This document shows positions 37,383-51,948 of a DNA stretch of 64,000 bases, one piece after another. Within the stretch, counting starts at the first letter, position 1; every line of letters begins with the position of its first letter. Made by a program: the position numbers and the translations under genes. Origin of the DNA: Ophelia neglecta. Taxonomy: Eukaryota. The DNA lies in the NCBI GenBank assembly GCA_965285935.1, contig OZ260667.1:27590001-27654000 (forward strand). The letters are read 5' to 3'. Below the pieces are notes generated by a model. The model had not been told where the DNA came from. It ran no database searches and worked only from the letters and a program-made list of their open reading frames with translations.

Positions 37383-37423
37383 TTTATTAAGAGCAATAGT
37401 GGATTTTATTACATGTGTTTATT
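37383..37423 (-). terminator. Candidate polyadenylation signals of the Ninjurin-like gene
   Basis: Three minus-strand AATAAA hexamers (37383-37388, 37405-37410, 37418-37423), about 3.3 kb downstream of the stop codon. Confidence 0.35.
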
Positions 37424-38249
37424 CAAACATATGTAGTATATATTTGGAAGGAATGTAACAGTGTTAATACCAAAAAAATGTGTGATTGGGAACTAGATAC
37501 AAAAACGGACAGAGTCTACTTGGATATGCGATATATCTTTCGATTGTTTAAATAATTGAGACTAACATTGAATTTTACTCACATTAACAATCTATGATGA
37601 TTATGCTATTGTGTTGAGGTCTTGGTTAATTATCTCCACTCTTTATATCTATACACAACTAAATATACATAAACACTGTCTGCGTTGCAGCAACTACAAA
37701 AAACACTTGGACTAGAGAGGTTTAGTACAAATATTGGTGTTAGTATTGAAAATATAATTTCACGCTAAAGTATTAGATGAATGCAATGGAGGTCGCATAT
37801 TAAATCCTCGATAAGCTGCTTGCAAAAGACTAACCTAGAATGATGTGATGATTTATTTAAAGGTTATTATTCATTTAGTTAGCATGGTTAGGAAACCAAT
37901 TTTGCAGTGTTATTAAGCTTTCGGATATGACACTTAGTCACCATTACGTGCGCTTTACTATTAAGGGCTACATGAAACACAACATGTCCAAATCGACATA
38001 CATGACATTCTCAAAGAGAATTAACGAAATACCACCTGCACTGCAATGCTTATAAAACAAACCACAGATACACTGCAGATATAATAGGTAAAAGACTGCC
38101 TTTACATCTTGACTGAAGTACCATACAATGGCGATAAACTCTCTGTTAGATACTGCTGCCTGATAAAAATACAAGACAATTTTTAATAGGGTGATTACCC
38201 ACCTAAAATGTCTCTAGTTGTGTTTCTCCTTACTTACTCTAAATGGACA

Positions 38250-38317: not shown

Positions 38318-40682
38318 TAAAGACAGTGCATTGCTTCGGCATTTTTCAAGAAAACACGTTTCTATTAAAATTTATCCTTAACCCAACATTTTCGCAGATG
38401 GACATACAACAATCTGTAACATCATTAATTTCGGTTAAGAAATAACTTGATTGCTTATTTAGATTAAAAGACAACACTAGTTTCAAAACCTTCTGTACGT
38501 GTTAATCATTTTCTTCAAATGTATTGCTTGCCCAGAATAAATATTCTTCAAGAGGTGCGGATGTACAAAGCCGGATTTTGGACTAGACTACAATCGTTCC
38601 CAAACTTGACATGAGGTATGAATTATTAACAGTCAGAATCTTGTGTATTCAAGTTTTTCATTCAACTGCCAAAATGGAATTTTAATTCCCAACCAAGCTA
38701 TACTCATACGTTAGCGCTCTATGATTCGGAGTAAAATACCTATCCAAAATGTCAACAAAAAATAGTTTCATACTGATGCCCAATCAAGGACTGAGCCAAT
38801 AGATAAGTTCCTGATTTGAAGGGACGAGTGACACTAACCCGGGACATTCTAAATCCAATGTGGTTTGACATTTAGTTTATATACAGTTTAATATGTCTCC
38901 TATGACGTTTTATATACACACAGGGACCGGCAGTTATGTACAGGCTCCTGTTATCCAAAATTCTTGATAATGCTTAAGGTATCTGTTAACCCCATAAAGA
39001 TGATAAACTGCAAATATTGCATTCAAACAAATATATGGCGAAACTGTAAACTTCAATAAAGTTTACAATGTCAGCTAAATATCAGGAAGGAATTCAAAAC
39101 ATTAAAACTAAAATGTGAGTTTGTAAGCCATATTGTGTTAAAATTGTACAGTATTATACAAAACATATAACGTTCCACTTGACCGGGATTATGACACACA
39201 ATTGTTCAGCTAGGTACTAAGGTTTCAAAATTTCAATATTCAGATTTAAGCTATTAAAACACTTATAGTAAAAGCCATTAAATTACACGAATGTCTAAAG
39301 GAATAACCCAAATTTGTCACTTATGACGAAAATGGAAAAATTCAATCGAAGAATTCGACCTCAAGCTAACACAAATGTAAATGTCATAATGCACCAATAA
39401 CTTAATTTTTTTTGGGTCGAAATTGTTTTAGATCCACTGTCACTTTAACACAAATAACTTATAAAGTTCACATTATGTTTTAAAATTCTATCCAAATATC
39501 AAATTGACAGGATGGTCTTCAATAAAATTGTATACGCCATTTATTTATTGTAGTTTTACGACGAATCAAACATTTTGTTTCTTCACTACAGGGGTTAACA
39601 CGCACCTCAAGAACTAGGCAACTTCACTAATCTAATCAACGTTGAAAATATGTTTGGTCGGTCTGTCTCTTCCTAAATCTAGTATGTGGCCCGGATACGA
39701 CTGAGGCATGCAACAATGCAAAAAAAAATGATGACTTGTAAAATGATTCTGCCAACTGTTACCACAATTGTTTGTTCAAATGCAGAACACTGAACCTAGT
39801 AACTTAGGCCTCTCCAATATCTTTCGAATTACTTAATTAGCACATTCTCGGCGGAAATCGTCCACCTTCTTGAATTATTAGTTTATAGCCATGTGGCGCT
39901 ATATGTCCAAGATGGCGGCAATGATTTCCAAGTGGCGAGCTTTCTACTTCTGCCTGGATCTTCGTTCAGTCCTAGCCCTTTTAACAGCATCACATATCTC
40001 TGCCGATGTATGGTGAGGAGTTAAGAAACACATCTCCTGCTAGAGATGATTTACATACGTGGTCCACTTTGATTGCGGAGTCACACACACTCACACATAA
40101 ACCTTACCATTTGTACACAATTGTGACTAGATTCTTGGGAATCGTGGTCCCTCAATTTTCCAATAATTATTCAGTATGTTTCGATAGCCATCAATGAACA
40201 TATTTACTCTCAGTGTTAATTTGGGCCAGATACGATATTCCCCCGATAAATCGGTTCTTGTCGGTATCCACATTCCACATTTGGCTAGATTCTTCGAAAT
40301 AGTTTTTTTACTGCGATTTCAGCGCAAATCTAGTATATCCTTTTCAATATGATATTCACAAATATGTCCACTTTCCGCCAAAATACAATCCGAAACATTA
40401 GTTCAGATACACACATCGTTCATACATATTAATTACCACCAGATAAAAACACTATTAGGATAACCAAAAAAACCGATTGATTAATTGAACAAACGATCTT
40501 TCCTTGCAATGTCCAAGGTAAAATTTCCGCCTTTTACTGGGGCGATAATGATATGAATTTAATAATATTTACTTTATGGTGGTAAGAAATTTATCTACGC
40601 GGGGTTGTTGTCACTTAGATAGGACACTGCACTACTAAGTCGCACGAATTGACTTACGACGGGCGCTGTGGGAGGGGTACGA

Positions 40683-41594
40683 TCATACTGCGCCGTTGCC
40701 GCTGGTGTGGGTTGCGTTGCGATGGGGTATGTTGAGGACCATCCCGGAGAGGCCACCAGAAATGCCGAAGGTTGTGATGAACACGTTCATCAGCATGACA
40801 AAGTAGAGCAGATATGTCGCCATATGCTGCCAGAAGCTGATCTTGCGGAAAGTGATTCTCTCCTGGCGATCCTCGTACTGCTCCTTGACGAAGAAGGCGT
40901 GGTGCTGCTGAGCCTCGGCCAATTTCTGCTCGGCCTCGGCTTCCTCCTTCTCCCTCATGGCGCCATTGCACTCGTCACGGGCTTTATTAAGCTCCTCCTC
41001 CAAGTCGGGATTGGCCGGCGTCCGTTTCAGCGCCTCCTCCACCACTTTGACGTAGTTACTAGCCCGGACAATCTTCACGTCGGCGTCTGCCACCTTGACC
41101 CGGGCCACCTCGATGTTACTATCGGCGCGCTCGAGGTCAATGATGGATTCCATACGAGGCTCTAACGGCCAGTCACAGCAGCCAGATGGATCCTCGTCAT
41201 CATGGGAGGACGTCACTGCGGTCGTCCGCTGCAATGGTTCCCGGCTGGCTGTCGTCGCGCGCACGGACAGATAGGTACCGTTCTTTCTCGGGCCCCAGCG
41301 GCAAGCCCTGCAGCAGCACATAAAGCAGTTCGCAATGTCGTAGCACCAGCCCGTACGTTCGGTGGCCTGGTAATAGTGCAAGTTGCCAATGTAGATGATG
41401 ATCATCCCCACAAAAATCTCCAGGGATATGCATGCAATTAAGAGGGTGAGGACGAAGTCGTAAAAGCGATGGCCTTGGCGGCCTATGTCGAGCAGGAGTT
41501 TGAGCTCGGTTATCTGGGTCAGGGAAAGAATTGTGATAAGTGCTCCCTGTGCTTTCGTCTCCGACTGCTCCAGCTCACTATGCCGGGCCAACAA
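40683..41594 (-). CDS. Ninjurin-family membrane protein with a large inter-helix insertion; terminal coding exon (303 aa)
   Basis: GC-rich open exon with acceptor tctttatttttacag| (phase 0). TKAQGALITILSLTQITELKLLLDIGRQGHRFYDFVLTLLIACISLEIFVGMIIIYIG and KISFWQHMATYLLYFVMLMNVFITTFGI align with human NINJ1 ...SQLKAVVEQGPSFAFYVPLVVLISISLVLQIGVGVLLIFL and KLDFLNNLATGLVFIIVVVNIFITAFGV. Confidence 0.92.
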   Translation of the reverse strand: MLARHSELEQSETKAQGALITILSLTQITELKLLLDIGRQGHRFYDFVLTLLIACISLEIFVGMIIIYIGNLHYYQATERTGWCYDIANCFMCCCRACRWGPRKNGTYLSVRATTASREPLQRTTAVTSSHDDEDPSGCCDWPLEPRMESIIDLERADSNIEVARVKVADADVKIVRASNYVKVVEEALKRTPANPDLEEELNKARDECNGAMREKEEAEAEQKLAEAQQHHAFFVKEQYEDRQERITFRKISFWQHMATYLLYFVMLMNVFITTFGISGGLSGMVLNIPHRNATHTSGNGAV

Positions 41595-42487
41595 CTGTAA
41601 AAATAAAGACACTTTGATTTTATTTTAATGATATCGCGGGATAACTTTGCCATGGGTCTATACAATTTCAATATGACCGTACATGGTTACCGGAGACGCA
41701 CAAAATACTGTGCTATTTTTTAATCGTTTTAAGTATCGTACTTCATCGATCTTCACACTCGTGTTATTAAGCTCGAAATACCATCTCTAAGTCTATGGCC
41801 ATGACGCATATCTGACAACTACATGCATCACTACTAAATGAAAGTATAGTATCGAGGTACCACAGGGTGTAAGTTTATCCTTTGGTTTTTTGTTCAGTGC
41901 GTAATGATATATGTTCTAAGATTAAATTGGTGGAGTTATATTAAAATTATATACCCAAAATAATGGATGCTCCATTGTCTTTATTGTCTTGAATTCAAAC
42001 TGTTTGTTATTTGAAAAAGTAGTGATTTTTAGAGCAATAGGAAAGAGAATTTTTAAAAAGCACTTATGTACAGGAAAAATGATTTGAGTATTTAATTTCC
42101 AGGCTTATATACACTATGTGTGTATATTATAATGTCTATAGACCTATATGCGCAAGTAGGGAATACACCAGAAGTATATATTTGAGGAAACACCCAGGAA
42201 AAACCAGGAAATGACCCAAGATAAGCAATATTACCATCGAAAAGAAAGGTGCAATGTTTTCTTCATTTTGATCTATGCACCAACCAAGCAAAAAGTGTTC
42301 ACGTGACACCGGCGCGCGAGACAGATAACATGTTTTTCGGGGAATAGGTGACACAGGGTTAGTTCGAAATACTCTTTTTTTCGCTGGTCGAAAGCAGTTT
42401 AAATCCAACATATTTAACACATTATATGCAAGTGATATCAGTTTTTGTTATGAACTGATTTATTTATTGCATATCTATTTACTACCT

Positions 42488-42609
42488 GGGGCTGAGAACA
42501 TATTTATTGGTGTGTGTGTTGCTGTGTCAGCTGGTTTCTGATGGTGTTAGACCGAGCCAATGGACTATTGTTGATCAATGATTTGATTTTGTCAGCCGGG
42601 TATCCACTC
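42488..42609 (-). repeat. Unclassified dispersed repeat, copy B (intron of the Ninjurin-like gene)
   Basis: Reverse complement aligns with 16871-16985 over about 115 bp. Confidence 0.75.
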
Positions 42610-44104: not shown

Positions 44105-44178
44105 CTCTTTAACTTTAGCTCTACCACTTTCTGCCATTCTTGCAACGGCTTGTGCCATATGAGGCGTGCTCCACGTAT
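44105..44178 (-). CDS. Ninjurin-like gene, penultimate coding exon (74 nt, phase 1 to 0)
   Basis: Acceptor gttctttattttcag| and donor GAG|gtatgt. Reads (D)TWSTPHMAQAVARMAESGRAKVKE, in frame with the 41594 exon. Confidence 0.75.
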
Positions 44179-45491
44179 CTGAAAATAAAGAACATTCATA
44201 GTCAATTCAGGCATGCGAAAATGAGACCGATATAAGTACCGTTACAAGCTACAAAAGGTGCGCTCTGGTTTCTTTATGGGAAACAATGTTAAGTGGATGA
44301 ATGAATGAGCTTCATTCCGAGAAGTTTCAACAGTGCAATGCCAAGGTTTTAGGAAACAAAAGAGGGAGGCTGAATAATTCCCCCGCCTAGTCTGAGTGAG
44401 AAAAGCTGAGAGAAGTTAGTCAGGATTAAGGACGGCTCAAGCATAACTAGTATAAATGAATATATATAAACAGCTCGTCACCTTCACATAAAAAAATTAT
44501 AATAAAATAAACTATGTATTTGGATATTAGGGAAAGTGATCACCAGCGATTGTGCATTTACCAATTGCTTGTAAGCTTCCAATAAGATGCAGAAAAGCGC
44601 ATTATTATTAAATTATAGTTCTATCAACGCGTTGTAATATGATTTGGAAAATCGAAATCTATTGACGAAGTTGTTTTCTATGTAATACGAGTAGTATCAC
44701 AGTCCGTGTGCAAACGAATACGGCTGTAATCCCATCACACGCGTTTTTGTATTTTTGCGAAAAAGGCAGATTGCTTCCTCGAGCCTTCTCATTCATATCG
44801 ACAAACACGAGAGAAGGGTTGTTAGCGCTCCCGTTAAAGCGGAAGTTTGGTACAGTAATGACTGAGTAATCACCCTACATGTCAAATCACAGAAATCAGG
44901 GACTTAACAAGTCCATAGCTTTTGATGCGAAATGACAACTACACAATTCCCACTGGTGATATTGGCTCAGAGAGAGAAGCTTGAAACGCCCAGGCAGTTA
45001 TTCTATAGCGCTGGTTAAACAAGCGCGTTTTCGGGTTGTTGTTCAAGCAAATATAGATGGCACAAGATCCCAAAAGTCAAATTACCATTTTTATTTATGA
45101 GTTCAATCTAGAAGCAGACAATGTCATGCTGTTTTTGTCAGTCCACATCAATGCTAACACATCAATGGAGCAGATACCGACACAAGGCAAGAGAAAATGA
45201 CAATAGTGTTTCATTGGTGAATGAAATATAATGAAAAACTGAAAGGATTAATAGGCAATGGTTATTCGAATTAAGCCACTAAGCATAGTAAGCAAGCTCT
45301 AATAATTGGTTAAAATAACAGATTTACGATGGACCATTTCTCACCGCCTGCCAAGTGCACCTCTCATTTGTTTGAGTGAGGTGCTAGATAATATACGAGT
45401 GAGTCCCTAATAATCTATATCAAATCTAAACTATTGAAAAACTCCAGATATCGATTCTAAATCTCATCGATCTAAGTCTAGCTTCACATAC

Positions 45492-45528
45492 CGGTCCCCC
45501 TGTGTTGTAGGACTTGGCGGATGGACAT
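45492..45528 (-). CDS. Ninjurin-like gene, alternative start segment (MSIRQVLQHRGT) within exon 45492-45596
   Basis: Acceptor cccttctcattgtag| at 45596 and donor CCG|gtatgt at 45492. ACCATGT follows in-frame stops. Phase-1 join to 44178 gives a 340-aa protein. Confidence 0.5.
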
Positions 45529-45664
45529 GGTCCACTACTAGCTTCATGAGACAATGCCCTGAATTGAGCTTGATGACGTCCCATTGCAACTGCAGCCTAC
45601 AATGAGAAGGGACGTAAGTTAGAAAAAAGTAATCCTGATATCACACCGCCGTGCTTTAGGCTTG

Positions 45665-51763: not shown

Positions 51764-51948
51764 CGTGGTAGTCATTGTGGAAATCCAGATTTCGTAGCAT
51801 GATGCAGTTGCCAATGCTCATATTGACTGCAGATGGGGGCACTTGGAGGATGACCTCTGGCTGACGGGCGGGGGACCCCGACGGGGAAACACTCAGCCGC
51901 TGGAGGCCTATCTCGGCTGGTGATGTCCTGTCGACTAAGAGTCTCTCT
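51764..51948 (-). CDS. Ninjurin-like gene, candidate upstream coding exon (185 nt, phase 2 to 1)
   Basis: GC-rich island with acceptor ccctctttacccctag| and donor ACG|gtaaga. Open frame ERLLVDRTSPAEIGLQRLSVSPSGSPARQPEVILQVPPSAVNMSIGNCIMLRNLDFHNDYH is in phase with the 44178 exon. Confidence 0.55.

What the first reader, a model, noticed from the sequence alone, without database searches (positions are those of the whole stretch)
40845..41384. Ninjurin with a ~170-aa insertion (Cys cluster + coiled-coil hairpin) between its last two membrane helices
Seen: 180 residues separate ...IIIYIG from KISFWQHMAT, where human NINJ1 has only about 11 (KYDLNNPAKHA). The insert contains WCYDIANCFMCCCRACRW, a T/S/acidic linker with a second CC, and about 95 aa of heptad-rich helix broken by RTPANPD (helix-turn-helix). 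It sits in the same exon with no intron signals. Known: NINJ1 executes plasma-membrane rupture by oligomerising, and this loop is cytosolic. The C-terminal NAT sequon fits an extracellular C-terminus. Inference: a Ninjurin subfamily with a built-in cytosolic regulatory or scaffolding module (palmitoyl anchor plus coiled coil) that could gate oligomerisation or link the protein to partners. I know of no described Ninjurin with this architecture.
Basis: partly seen in the sequence, partly recalled or inferred. Interest (0 to 1): 0.82.

Follow-up and report, generated by a model that had tools for sequence, protein, structure and literature searches.

The report
Ninjurin with long cytosolic coiled-coil loop
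This is a real, strongly conserved gene for a Ninjurin-type membrane protein whose short inner loop has grown into a ~180-residue module (cysteine cluster, floppy linker, rigid helical hairpin); Ninjurins rupture dying cells in vertebrates, I found no paper describing this variant, and its function is untested.

Summary
The minus-strand exon 40683-41594 encodes a Ninjurin (PF04923, 38 bits against a 26-bit cut-off). Human NINJ1 matches it in two pieces: residues 13-69 to NINJ1 46-101, and 248-285 to NINJ1 111-148. So 178 residues replace the 9-residue intracellular loop.

The insert is translated and constrained. Against a related species the hairpin shows 50 synonymous and 4 non-synonymous differences. 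The Capitella teleta orthologue is 78% identical.

AlphaFold2 predicts three parts: a short Cys-rich helix, a disordered linker of about 45 residues, and an antiparallel hairpin (pLDDT 97-98) whose second arm runs straight into the last membrane helix.

The genome holds at least five such genes (a sixth locus is fragmentary) and two ordinary short-loop Ninjurins. There are two long-loop subfamilies: a slow-evolving one (this gene) and a fast-evolving one. Only two named database entries exist (Capitella, Intoshia), both "hypothetical". I found no paper describing the architecture.

No RNA data were available. Palmitoylation, oligomer control and any lytic activity remain inference.

This scan had already reported a paralogue on another piece of this genome (s1-736070).

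Verdict: a new variant of a known kind, real, of moderately high interest.

The parts
40683..41594 (-). Main coding exon (303 codons plus stop). It encodes helices alpha1/alpha2, TM alpha3, the insert, TM alpha4 and the C-terminal tail.
   Evidence: ORF. Acceptor AG at 41595-96. A CAG precedes LLARH in nearly all related genomic ORFs. PF04923 hit. 82.7% nucleotide and 94% protein identity to L009.
41388..41558 (-). Ninjurin core, first part: amphipathic alpha1/alpha2 and TM alpha3 (protein residues 13-69, aligned to human NINJ1 46-101).
   Evidence: phmmer against the PDB. AF2 helices 2-37 and 43-78. Mean top-residue frequency 0.83.
40845..41384 (-).
41295..41378 (-). Juxtamembrane Cys cluster (residues 73-100; C84, C90, C93-95, C98) on a short predicted helix (84-97).
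   Evidence: Cys columns are 50-86% conserved, with a median of 8 Cys (7-10 in most members) between TM3 and the hairpin. AF2 helix.
41160..41294 (-). Disordered Ser/Thr/acidic linker (residues 101-145) ending in the second Cys pair (C139, C140).
   Evidence: pLDDT below 50 for residues 101-142. Column entropy 2.55 bits. dN/dS 0.064. The CC pair is 70-73% conserved.
40845..41159 (-). Antiparallel coiled-coil hairpin: arm 1 is residues 146-191, the turn is TPAN 192-195, and arm 2 is residues 196-250, continuous with TM alpha4.
   Evidence: AF2 helices 146-191 and 196-279, with pLDDT 97-98 over 160-230. Heptad a/d positions are 0.84 apolar in arm 1. 50 synonymous against 4 non-synonymous differences.
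40758..40844 (-). TM alpha4 (residues 251-279), aligned to NINJ1 114-142, with the NxFITxFG motif.
   Evidence: Mean top-residue frequency 0.86.
40686..40757 (-). Variable C-terminal tail with an N-glycosylation sequon (NAT).
   Evidence: Sequon in 48 of 54 type A relatives and 18 of 23 type B relatives.
44105..44178 (-). Inferred upstream coding exon (74 nt, enters in phase 1), ...TWSTPHMAQAVARMAESGRAKVKE.
   Evidence: 90% identical block in L009. 5 of 7 differences are synonymous in this frame. It is flanked by an AG acceptor and a GT donor. No RNA support.
51764..51821 (-). Inferred first coding exon (ATG, 58 nt, ends in phase 1), MSIGNCIMLRNLDFHNDYH.
   Evidence: Conserved ATG, frame and GTAAG donor in L009. 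About half of the differences between the two species are synonymous in this frame. Its phase matches the next exon, and the three exons sum to 1041 nt, or 347 codons. No RNA support.

Best explanation
The gene encodes a Ninjurin-family membrane protein of about 347 residues. Its core is the usual one: amphipathic alpha1/alpha2 followed by the alpha3/alpha4 transmembrane hairpin. The intracellular alpha3-alpha4 loop, 9 residues in human NINJ1, is replaced by a 178-residue cytosolic module with three parts. (i) A juxtamembrane poly-cysteine helix, most likely S-acylated and lying on the inner leaflet. (ii) A disordered acidic Ser/Thr linker of about 45 residues ending in a second CC pair. (iii) An antiparallel two-helix coiled coil of about 100 residues, roughly 7 nm long, whose second arm is one continuous helix with alpha4. 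Shown here: family membership, the position, conservation and fold of the insert, and the existence of a long-loop clade. Inferred: because the NINJ1 loop lies on the cytoplasmic face of the autoinhibited face-to-face dimer, hairpins of neighbouring protomers would lie side by side. I propose that they pack against each other, or against a cytosolic partner. That would set the oligomeric state of the Ninjurin core (dimer versus fence-like polymer) from the cytosolic side, with the acylated helix holding the module at the membrane.
For: Family membership: PF04923 at 38 bits against a 26-bit cut-off and a split phmmer hit to NINJ1 structures. The insert is real and constrained. It is 78% identical to Capitella and 94% identical to L009. 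dN/dS is about 0.004 in the hairpin. SNPs fall only at third codon positions. Fold: AF2 gives pLDDT 97-98 for the hairpin, with arm 2 continuous with TM4. The same architecture is predicted for the divergent paralogue L002, at mean pLDDT 81.9. Cytosolic side: mouse NINJ1 residues 105-112 are the intracellular loop and, together with the start of TM1, form a composite cytoplasmic epitope of the dimer (PMC11711097). C-tail sequons occur in 48 of 54 relatives, against 2 of 56 in the hairpin. There are 7-10 clustered Cys next to the membrane. Interaction surface: outward-facing b, c, f heptad positions are as conserved as the core a, d positions (1.5-1.6 against 1.4-1.5 bits; linker 2.55 bits). 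Core packing residues of the NINJ1 filament are kept: Q91 to E59, G95 to G63, T123 to T260, F127 to Y264, N133 to N270. These come from the alignment, their conservation, and their roles from PMC10307626.
Against: There are no RNA or protein data. The only runs holding the exon are genomic, so expression and the two upstream exons are inferred. S-acylation cannot be tested in silico, and some members (P0097, P0107) have no Cys in the region. The K45-D53 salt bridge needed for NINJ1 filaments is absent (E12 and I20 at those positions), so NINJ1-like polymerisation may not occur. No multimer model was possible, so hairpin-hairpin packing is conjecture. Structure searches found only generic helical hairpins, which say nothing about function.
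Confidence: 0.55

Rival explanations
1. The cysteine clusters are not lipid anchors. They bind a metal or a redox cofactor (CxC, CC and CCC motifs as in metallothionein-like or Fe-S/Zn sites), making the loop a redox or metal sensor that controls the Ninjurin core.
For: Two separate Cys groups (C84-C98 and C139/C140) are conserved in type A. Type B also has CxC, CCC and CWC motifs. A flexible linker could bring the two groups together.
Against: The first cluster directly follows the membrane helix and is flanked by basic residues, the usual setting of S-acylated clusters (established knowledge, for example synaptotagmin-1 and SNAP-25). Cys number and spacing vary widely, from 0 to 12, which is unusual for a defined metal site. 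AF2 gives no ordered Cys-knot.
Confidence: 0.12
2. The long-loop proteins have left the membrane-rupture role. They act as stable structural or adhesion and scaffold proteins, with the hairpin serving as a docking rod for cortical or cytoskeletal partners rather than a regulator of self-assembly.
For: The K45-D53 pair essential for NINJ1 filaments is lost (PMC10307626). The genome keeps two ordinary short-loop Ninjurins that could carry the ancestral role. The very high conservation of the whole hairpin surface fits a fixed partner.
Against: Core alpha3/alpha4 packing residues and the alpha2 polar face (Q27, T29, E30, K32 and D36 are invariant) are retained. No partner-binding motif or known domain was detected.
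Confidence: 0.25
3. The insert is not part of the mature protein: it is removed as an intron, or the locus is an unexpressed pseudogene.
For: No RNA run could be found. All related sequences are predictions from genomic contigs.
Against: The frame is open in more than 100 relatives. There are 131 synonymous against 25 non-synonymous differences over the exon, and 50 against 4 in the hairpin. Population SNPs fall only at third codon positions. Protein-level conservation reaches Capitella and Intoshia across the insert.
Confidence: 0.03

Closest known systems
Vertebrate NINJ1 / NINJ2 (Pfam PF04923; structures 8CQR, 8UIP, 8SZA, 8SZB, 9BIA)
   Same: Amphipathic alpha1/alpha2, the alpha3/alpha4 transmembrane hairpin and the NxFITxFG motif. 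Equivalents of Q91, G95, T123, F127 and N133 are kept. AF2 predicts an unkinked alpha1-alpha2 helix like the inactive three-helix state. The C-terminal tail is probably extracellular.
   Different: The intracellular loop is 178 residues instead of 9. It carries a Cys cluster, a disordered linker and a 7-nm coiled-coil hairpin fused to alpha4. The K45-D53 salt-bridge positions are E and I. NINJ1 has no known built-in cytosolic domain.
Short-loop Ninjurin paralogues of the same genome (L001, L005)
   Same: Same Pfam family and the same single-exon core.
   Different: They give an unbroken PF04923 match (profile 2-102), so they have no insert.
Fast-evolving long-loop paralogues (type B: L002, L003, L006, L008; P0131, P0172 and others)
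   Same: Same layout: a Cys motif after TM3, a basic stretch, an acidic linker, a second Cys group, a hairpin with a TP-containing turn, and an xSFWQ entry into TM4. The type A profile aligns to them in one stretch across the insert. The AF2 architecture is the same.
   Different: Only 18-26% identical to the window protein. They carry an extra YPDYEYDILDRYDCWC-type motif and occur in several copies. The word search with L002 found only two relatives.
Juxtamembrane poly-cysteine S-acylation clusters (synaptotagmin-1, SNAP-25, CSP; from general knowledge, not tested here)
   Same: A run of cysteines within about 10-30 residues of the cytosolic end of a membrane helix, flanked by basic residues.
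   Different: No sequence homology, and acylation is not demonstrated here.
Generic antiparallel two-helix coiled coils (hantavirus N coiled coil 2IC9, lengthened ROP 9CFS, AcrA/MacA hairpins, SH3BP5)
   Same: Geometry of the hairpin: VIA-align Z 10-11 at rmsd 1.1-1.4 over 74-85 residues, and Foldseek E of 0.03 or worse.
   Different: The scores lie in the range expected for any long helical hairpin. There is no sequence relation, and none of these is fused to a Ninjurin helix.

Membership tests
Ninjurin (PF04923) | Significant match to the family HMM above the curated cut-off | tested here: met
   38 bits against a 26-bit cut-off, E=1.6e-9, profile 5-82 of 102. 22 of 25 type B relatives also match.
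Ninjurin (PF04923) | Two C-terminal hydrophobic helices (alpha3, alpha4) with the conserved NxFITxFG end | tested here: met
   Split phmmer hit to NINJ1: query 13-69 to NINJ1 46-101 and query 248-285 to NINJ1 111-148. AF2 helices 43-78 and 251-279.
Ninjurin (PF04923) | Amphipathic alpha1/alpha2 preceding alpha3 | tested here: met
   Aligned to NINJ1 46-71. The TQITELKLLLD segment is almost invariant across the family. AF2 helix 2-37.
Ninjurin (PF04923) | Short (about 10 residues) intracellular alpha3-alpha4 turn | tested here: not met
   178 residues replace NINJ1 102-110. Loop length is 170-249 residues in 55 type A members and 164-220 in 25 type B members. This is an architectural difference, not a failure of homology.
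NINJ1-type lytic filament former | K45-D53 intermolecular salt bridge | tested here: not met
   The aligned positions are E12 and I20. Their role is described in PMC10307626.
NINJ1-type lytic filament former | alpha3/alpha4 packing residues (Q91, G95, T123, F127) | tested here: met
   E59, G63, T260 and Y264, all at least 90% conserved in A2.
NINJ1-type lytic filament former | Oligomerises and ruptures membranes | not testable with these tools
   Needs expression in cells or liposomes.
Ninjurin topology | Loop cytosolic, C-terminus extracellular | tested here: inconclusive
   Indirect support only. C-tail sequons occur in 48 of 54 relatives against 2 of 56 in the hairpin. The loop has clustered free Cys. 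The homologous loop is cytoplasmic in mouse NINJ1 (PMC11711097).
S-acylated juxtamembrane Cys-cluster proteins | Thioester-linked fatty acid on the cluster | not testable with these tools
   Only position and conservation were assessed.

The most novel reading that the evidence does not exclude
Long-loop Ninjurins are membrane-remodelling or membrane-rupturing Ninjurins with a built-in cytosolic switch. The acylated, coiled-coil intracellular loop would lock neighbouring protomers in an inactive dimer, as a four-helix bundle under the face-to-face dimer. It would release them on a cytosolic cue such as de-acylation, cleavage or phosphorylation of the disordered acidic linker, or partner binding. 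That would be a natural example of cytosol-side control of Ninjurin activation, whose trigger in vertebrates is still unknown.
Probability: 0.15. Interest if true: 0.85.

Novelty: new variant of a known kind. Interest (0 to 1): 0.6.

Why it matters
NINJ1 executes plasma-membrane rupture in lytic cell death. How it is held inactive and what activates it are active questions. Recent work places the short intracellular loop on the cytoplasmic face of the autoinhibited dimer (PMC11711097). Here evolution has expanded exactly that loop into a large, very strongly conserved cytosolic module, and has kept it in at least two subfamilies alongside ordinary Ninjurins in the same genome. If the module controls assembly, it offers a natural handle for studying Ninjurin regulation from the cytosolic side, using chimeras, deletions and partner searches. 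It would also show that the Ninjurin core tolerates a large domain at this position. If it does not control assembly, it still defines an undescribed, multi-copy membrane-protein family. The named members are an annelid and an orthonectid, and the rest of its range is unknown.

Tried and rejected
RNA evidence. The only runs holding the exon (X1-X3, one sample) are genomic: their contigs run through the introns. Splicing and expression could therefore not be checked.

cDNA-like relatives. All related ORFs begin with read-through of the same CAG acceptor, so they are genomic predictions.

Origin of the insert. Pfam on the insert alone gave only noise (VIT, E=0.06; RNF152_C, E=0.17 on the whole protein). 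The best non-Ninjurin PDB sequence hits were ARHGEF11 at E=0.39 and stathmin at E above 5. The protein-atlas search of residues 73-250 found nothing usable. Foldseek and VIA-align returned only generic helical hairpins.

Taxonomic range. Cluster look-ups and contig look-ups returned no organism names except Capitella teleta and Intoshia linei. I cannot say which phyla hold the unnamed members. The idea that the window species is an annelid is an inference from its best named hit.

Conserved block 45397-45622 as a coding exon. I rejected this. The frame continuing from the first exon hits a stop, its own ATG frame ends in the wrong phase, and the indels against L009 are not multiples of three.

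SNARE-like reading of arm 2 plus TM4. I rejected this because AF2 predicts an intramolecular antiparallel hairpin with very high confidence, and no SNARE family matched.

Joined spliced model. All searches and folds used the main exon by reference.

Full report
**Observation**

The flagged stretch, window:40845-41384 on the minus strand, translates to exactly 180 residues, from NLHYYQ to ITFR.

The stretch lies inside the longest open frame of the whole window, 40683..41612 on the minus strand. A polypyrimidine tract and an AG at 41595-96 mark a splice acceptor, so the exon starts at 41594 with LLARHSELEQ.

Pfam's Ninjurin model matches residues 15-95 of the ORF at 38 bits against a 26-bit cut-off, but only over profile positions 5-82 of 102. 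phmmer against the PDB supplies the missing end as a second stretch. Query 13-69 aligns to human NINJ1 46-101, and query 248-285 aligns to NINJ1 111-148. So 178 residues (70-247) stand where NINJ1 has 9 (102-110).

**Is the insert part of the protein?**

No RNA run could be found. The three runs that hold the exon come from one sample and are genomic, because their contigs run straight through the introns. The case therefore rests on sequence constraint, and that is strong.

- The word search found 128 relatives with the same architecture. The best is 94% identical (P0001) and Capitella teleta CAPTEDRAFT_205572 is 78% identical. Intoshia linei also carries it.
- I compared the exon codon by codon with the contig that encodes P0001 (L009). 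The exon has 131 synonymous and 25 non-synonymous differences. The hairpin has 50 synonymous and 4 non-synonymous differences, a dN/dS near 0.004 with saturated dS. The linker gives a dN/dS of 0.064.
- The three SNPs that the resequencing contigs show inside the exon (40773, 40980, 41373) all fall on third codon positions. The flanking intron carries many more differences.

An intron or a dead gene would not look like this.

**Gene model**

Comparing 26 kb of the window with L009 shows three conserved blocks upstream of the main exon.

- Block 44105-44178 is flanked by AG and GT. It is 90% identical, and 5 of its 7 differences are synonymous in the frame that joins LLARH in phase.
- Block 51764-51821 starts with a conserved ATG, keeps its frame and its GTAAG donor, and ends in phase 1. 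That is the phase the next exon needs.
- The three exons sum to 1041 nt, or 347 codons.
- The block at 45397-45622 has indels that are not multiples of three and no compatible frame. I take it as non-coding.

This model is inference. Everything below used the main exon by reference.

**Structure**

I ran AlphaFold2 on a 56-sequence alignment (A2). Mean pLDDT was 75.5. The predicted elements are:

- helix 2-37 (alpha1 and alpha2, unkinked);
- helix 43-78 (alpha3);
- a short helix 84-97 carrying the Cys cluster;
- a disordered stretch 101-142;
- helices 146-191 and 196-279, joined by the TPAN turn.

Residues 160-230 have pLDDT 97-98. The second arm of the hairpin is a single helix with alpha4, so a rod of about 46 residues per arm (roughly 7 nm) hangs rigidly from the last membrane helix.

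Arm 1 has a clean heptad pattern, with a/d positions 0.84 apolar. The outward-facing b, c, f positions are as conserved as the core (1.5-1.6 against 1.4-1.5 bits). The linker has 2.55 bits and the C-tail 3.06. The whole surface of the rod is therefore under constraint, which points to contacts beyond the hairpin's own seam.

Foldseek and VIA-align found only generic antiparallel hairpins: E of 0.03 or worse, and Z of 11.3 or less, which is within the noise range stated for helical models. Pfam, PDB sequences and the protein atlas gave no family for the insert.

**Which side of the membrane?**

In mouse NINJ1, residues 105-112 are the intracellular loop. [quoted passage not shown] The insert replaces exactly this loop.

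Three further observations are consistent with a cytosolic position:

- 48 of 54 relatives have an N-x-S/T sequon in the otherwise unconserved C-terminal tail, against 2 of 56 in the hairpin;
- 18 of 23 type B relatives have a C-tail sequon;
- the loop carries 7-10 clustered, unpaired-looking cysteines right after alpha3, a pattern typical of cytosolic S-acylation sites (general knowledge, not tested here).

**A clade, not a single gene**

PF04923 finds eight loci in this 762-Mb genome.

- Two are ordinary Ninjurins with an unbroken profile match, 2-102 (L001, L005).
- One is the window gene.
- One (L004, 1.07 Mb away on the same chromosome) is a close paralogue split by introns.
- Four are divergent long-loop genes (L002, L003, L006, L008).

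The four divergent genes, which I call type B, share the window protein's layout:

- a Cys motif after alpha3;
- a basic stretch;
- an acidic linker;
- a second Cys group;
- a hairpin with a TP-containing turn;
- an xSFWQ entry into alpha4;
- a C-tail sequon.

The type A profile aligns to type B proteins in one stretch across the insert. For example, P0172 matches profile 14-303 at E=2.6e-25. AlphaFold2 predicts the same architecture for L002, with mean pLDDT 81.9 and a hairpin at 159-208 and 213-292. The insert is therefore older than the split between the two types.

The exhaustive HMM search of 1.84 billion representative proteins found only 236 proteins at E of 0.001 or better, and 48 at E of 1e-30 or better. 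The family is small. Loop length is 170-249 residues in type A and 164-220 in type B. A word search with L002 found only two relatives. Type B evolves quickly, while type A is among the most conserved parts of the protein set seen here.

**How it compares with NINJ1**

I mapped the functionally tested NINJ1 residues (PMC10307626) through the alignment.

- The K45-D53 salt bridge is lost: the aligned positions are E12 and I20.
- Q91, G95, T123, F127 and N133 correspond to E59, G63, T260, Y264 and N270. All are at least 90% conserved in the family.
- The polar face of alpha2 is nearly invariant.

So the alpha3/alpha4 packing surface is kept while the alpha1 latch differs. Whether the protein polymerises or lyses membranes cannot be decided here.

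**Mechanism: what is shown and what is inferred**

Shown: this is a Ninjurin with a conserved cytosolic-loop module, made of a Cys cluster, a linker, and a rigid hairpin fused to alpha4.

Inferred: the loops of the two subunits lie together on the cytoplasmic face of the NINJ1 dimer, and the whole hairpin surface is conserved. I therefore think the hairpins most likely pack against each other or against a partner, and so set the oligomeric state of the core. The acylated helix would hold the module at the inner leaflet. I put about 0.9 on the structural description and about 0.3 on this mechanism.

The rivals are a metal or redox site in the Cys clusters, a non-lytic scaffold role, and, very unlikely, an untranslated insert.

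**Novelty**

Only two named database entries carry the architecture, and both are "hypothetical protein". Cluster look-ups for 20 further members returned no names. Full-text searches combining ninjurin with coiled coil, invertebrate, phylogeny, annelid and polychaete terms found no description.

This scan had already reported a long-loop paralogue on another piece of the same genome (s1-736070). That note agrees with what I found and is not independent evidence.

I could not establish the taxonomic range. That the window species is an annelid is only an inference from its best named hit.

**Verdict**

The feature is real. It is a new variant of a known kind, and its function is untested.

Noticed in passing
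window 45397-45622 (minus strand): A block 73% identical to the related contig L009, with AG/GT-like borders. Its indels are not multiples of three and no frame is compatible with the Ninjurin exons. It may be an alternative 5' non-coding exon or a regulatory element in the first intron.
   Followed up: partly
window 39890-40021 and 37405-37504: Two further blocks conserved with L009 (72-74%) downstream of the stop codon. They may be 3' UTR or another element.
   Followed up: no
window 42270-42500: Contig depth roughly triples here, and many contigs end with unrelated sequence at 42349 and 42379-42382, suggesting a short dispersed repeat in the intron. A 42-bp stretch (42458-42499) is absent from the contigs of all three runs laid on the window.
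   Followed up: no
G000:C12:52468783-52476947 (L002, L008) and C12:53030251-53033496 (L003): Three fast-evolving long-loop Ninjurin paralogues cluster on the same chromosome. L002 and L008 are about 5 kb apart on opposite strands. L008 has an extra C-terminal tail of about 170 residues with repeated N-x-T sequons (YYVNRTFYFDRAFYVNKTF).
   Followed up: partly
G000:C12:28700887-28704081 (L004): A closer paralogue of the window gene lies 1.07 Mb away, with the coding sequence split by introns. One exon-sized frame encodes the second Cys pair and the first arm of the hairpin (...DDGCCRCHWPKKRRGEEFNQIDVATLDAQIEAARVKVANAVVKIVK).
   Followed up: no
window 41481-41576 (protein residues 7-38): The positions aligned to NINJ1 K45 and D53 are E12 and I20, so the filament salt bridge is absent. 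The alpha2 segment TQITELKLLLD is almost invariant across the family. This is the subject of another first-stage note (s1-748455).
   Followed up: partly
L009 10001-11092: The database protein P0001 (363 aa) does not match a standard translation of its own contig. The frame has a stop after ...HNSGNV, so the last 45 or so residues of P0001 are a read-through artefact of the gene caller.
   Followed up: partly
window 40668-41165 (plus strand): A 165-residue antisense open frame lies over the hairpin-coding region. I take it as a by-product of the GC-rich, codon-biased sense strand (GC 0.455 here against about 0.39 around it).
   Followed up: no
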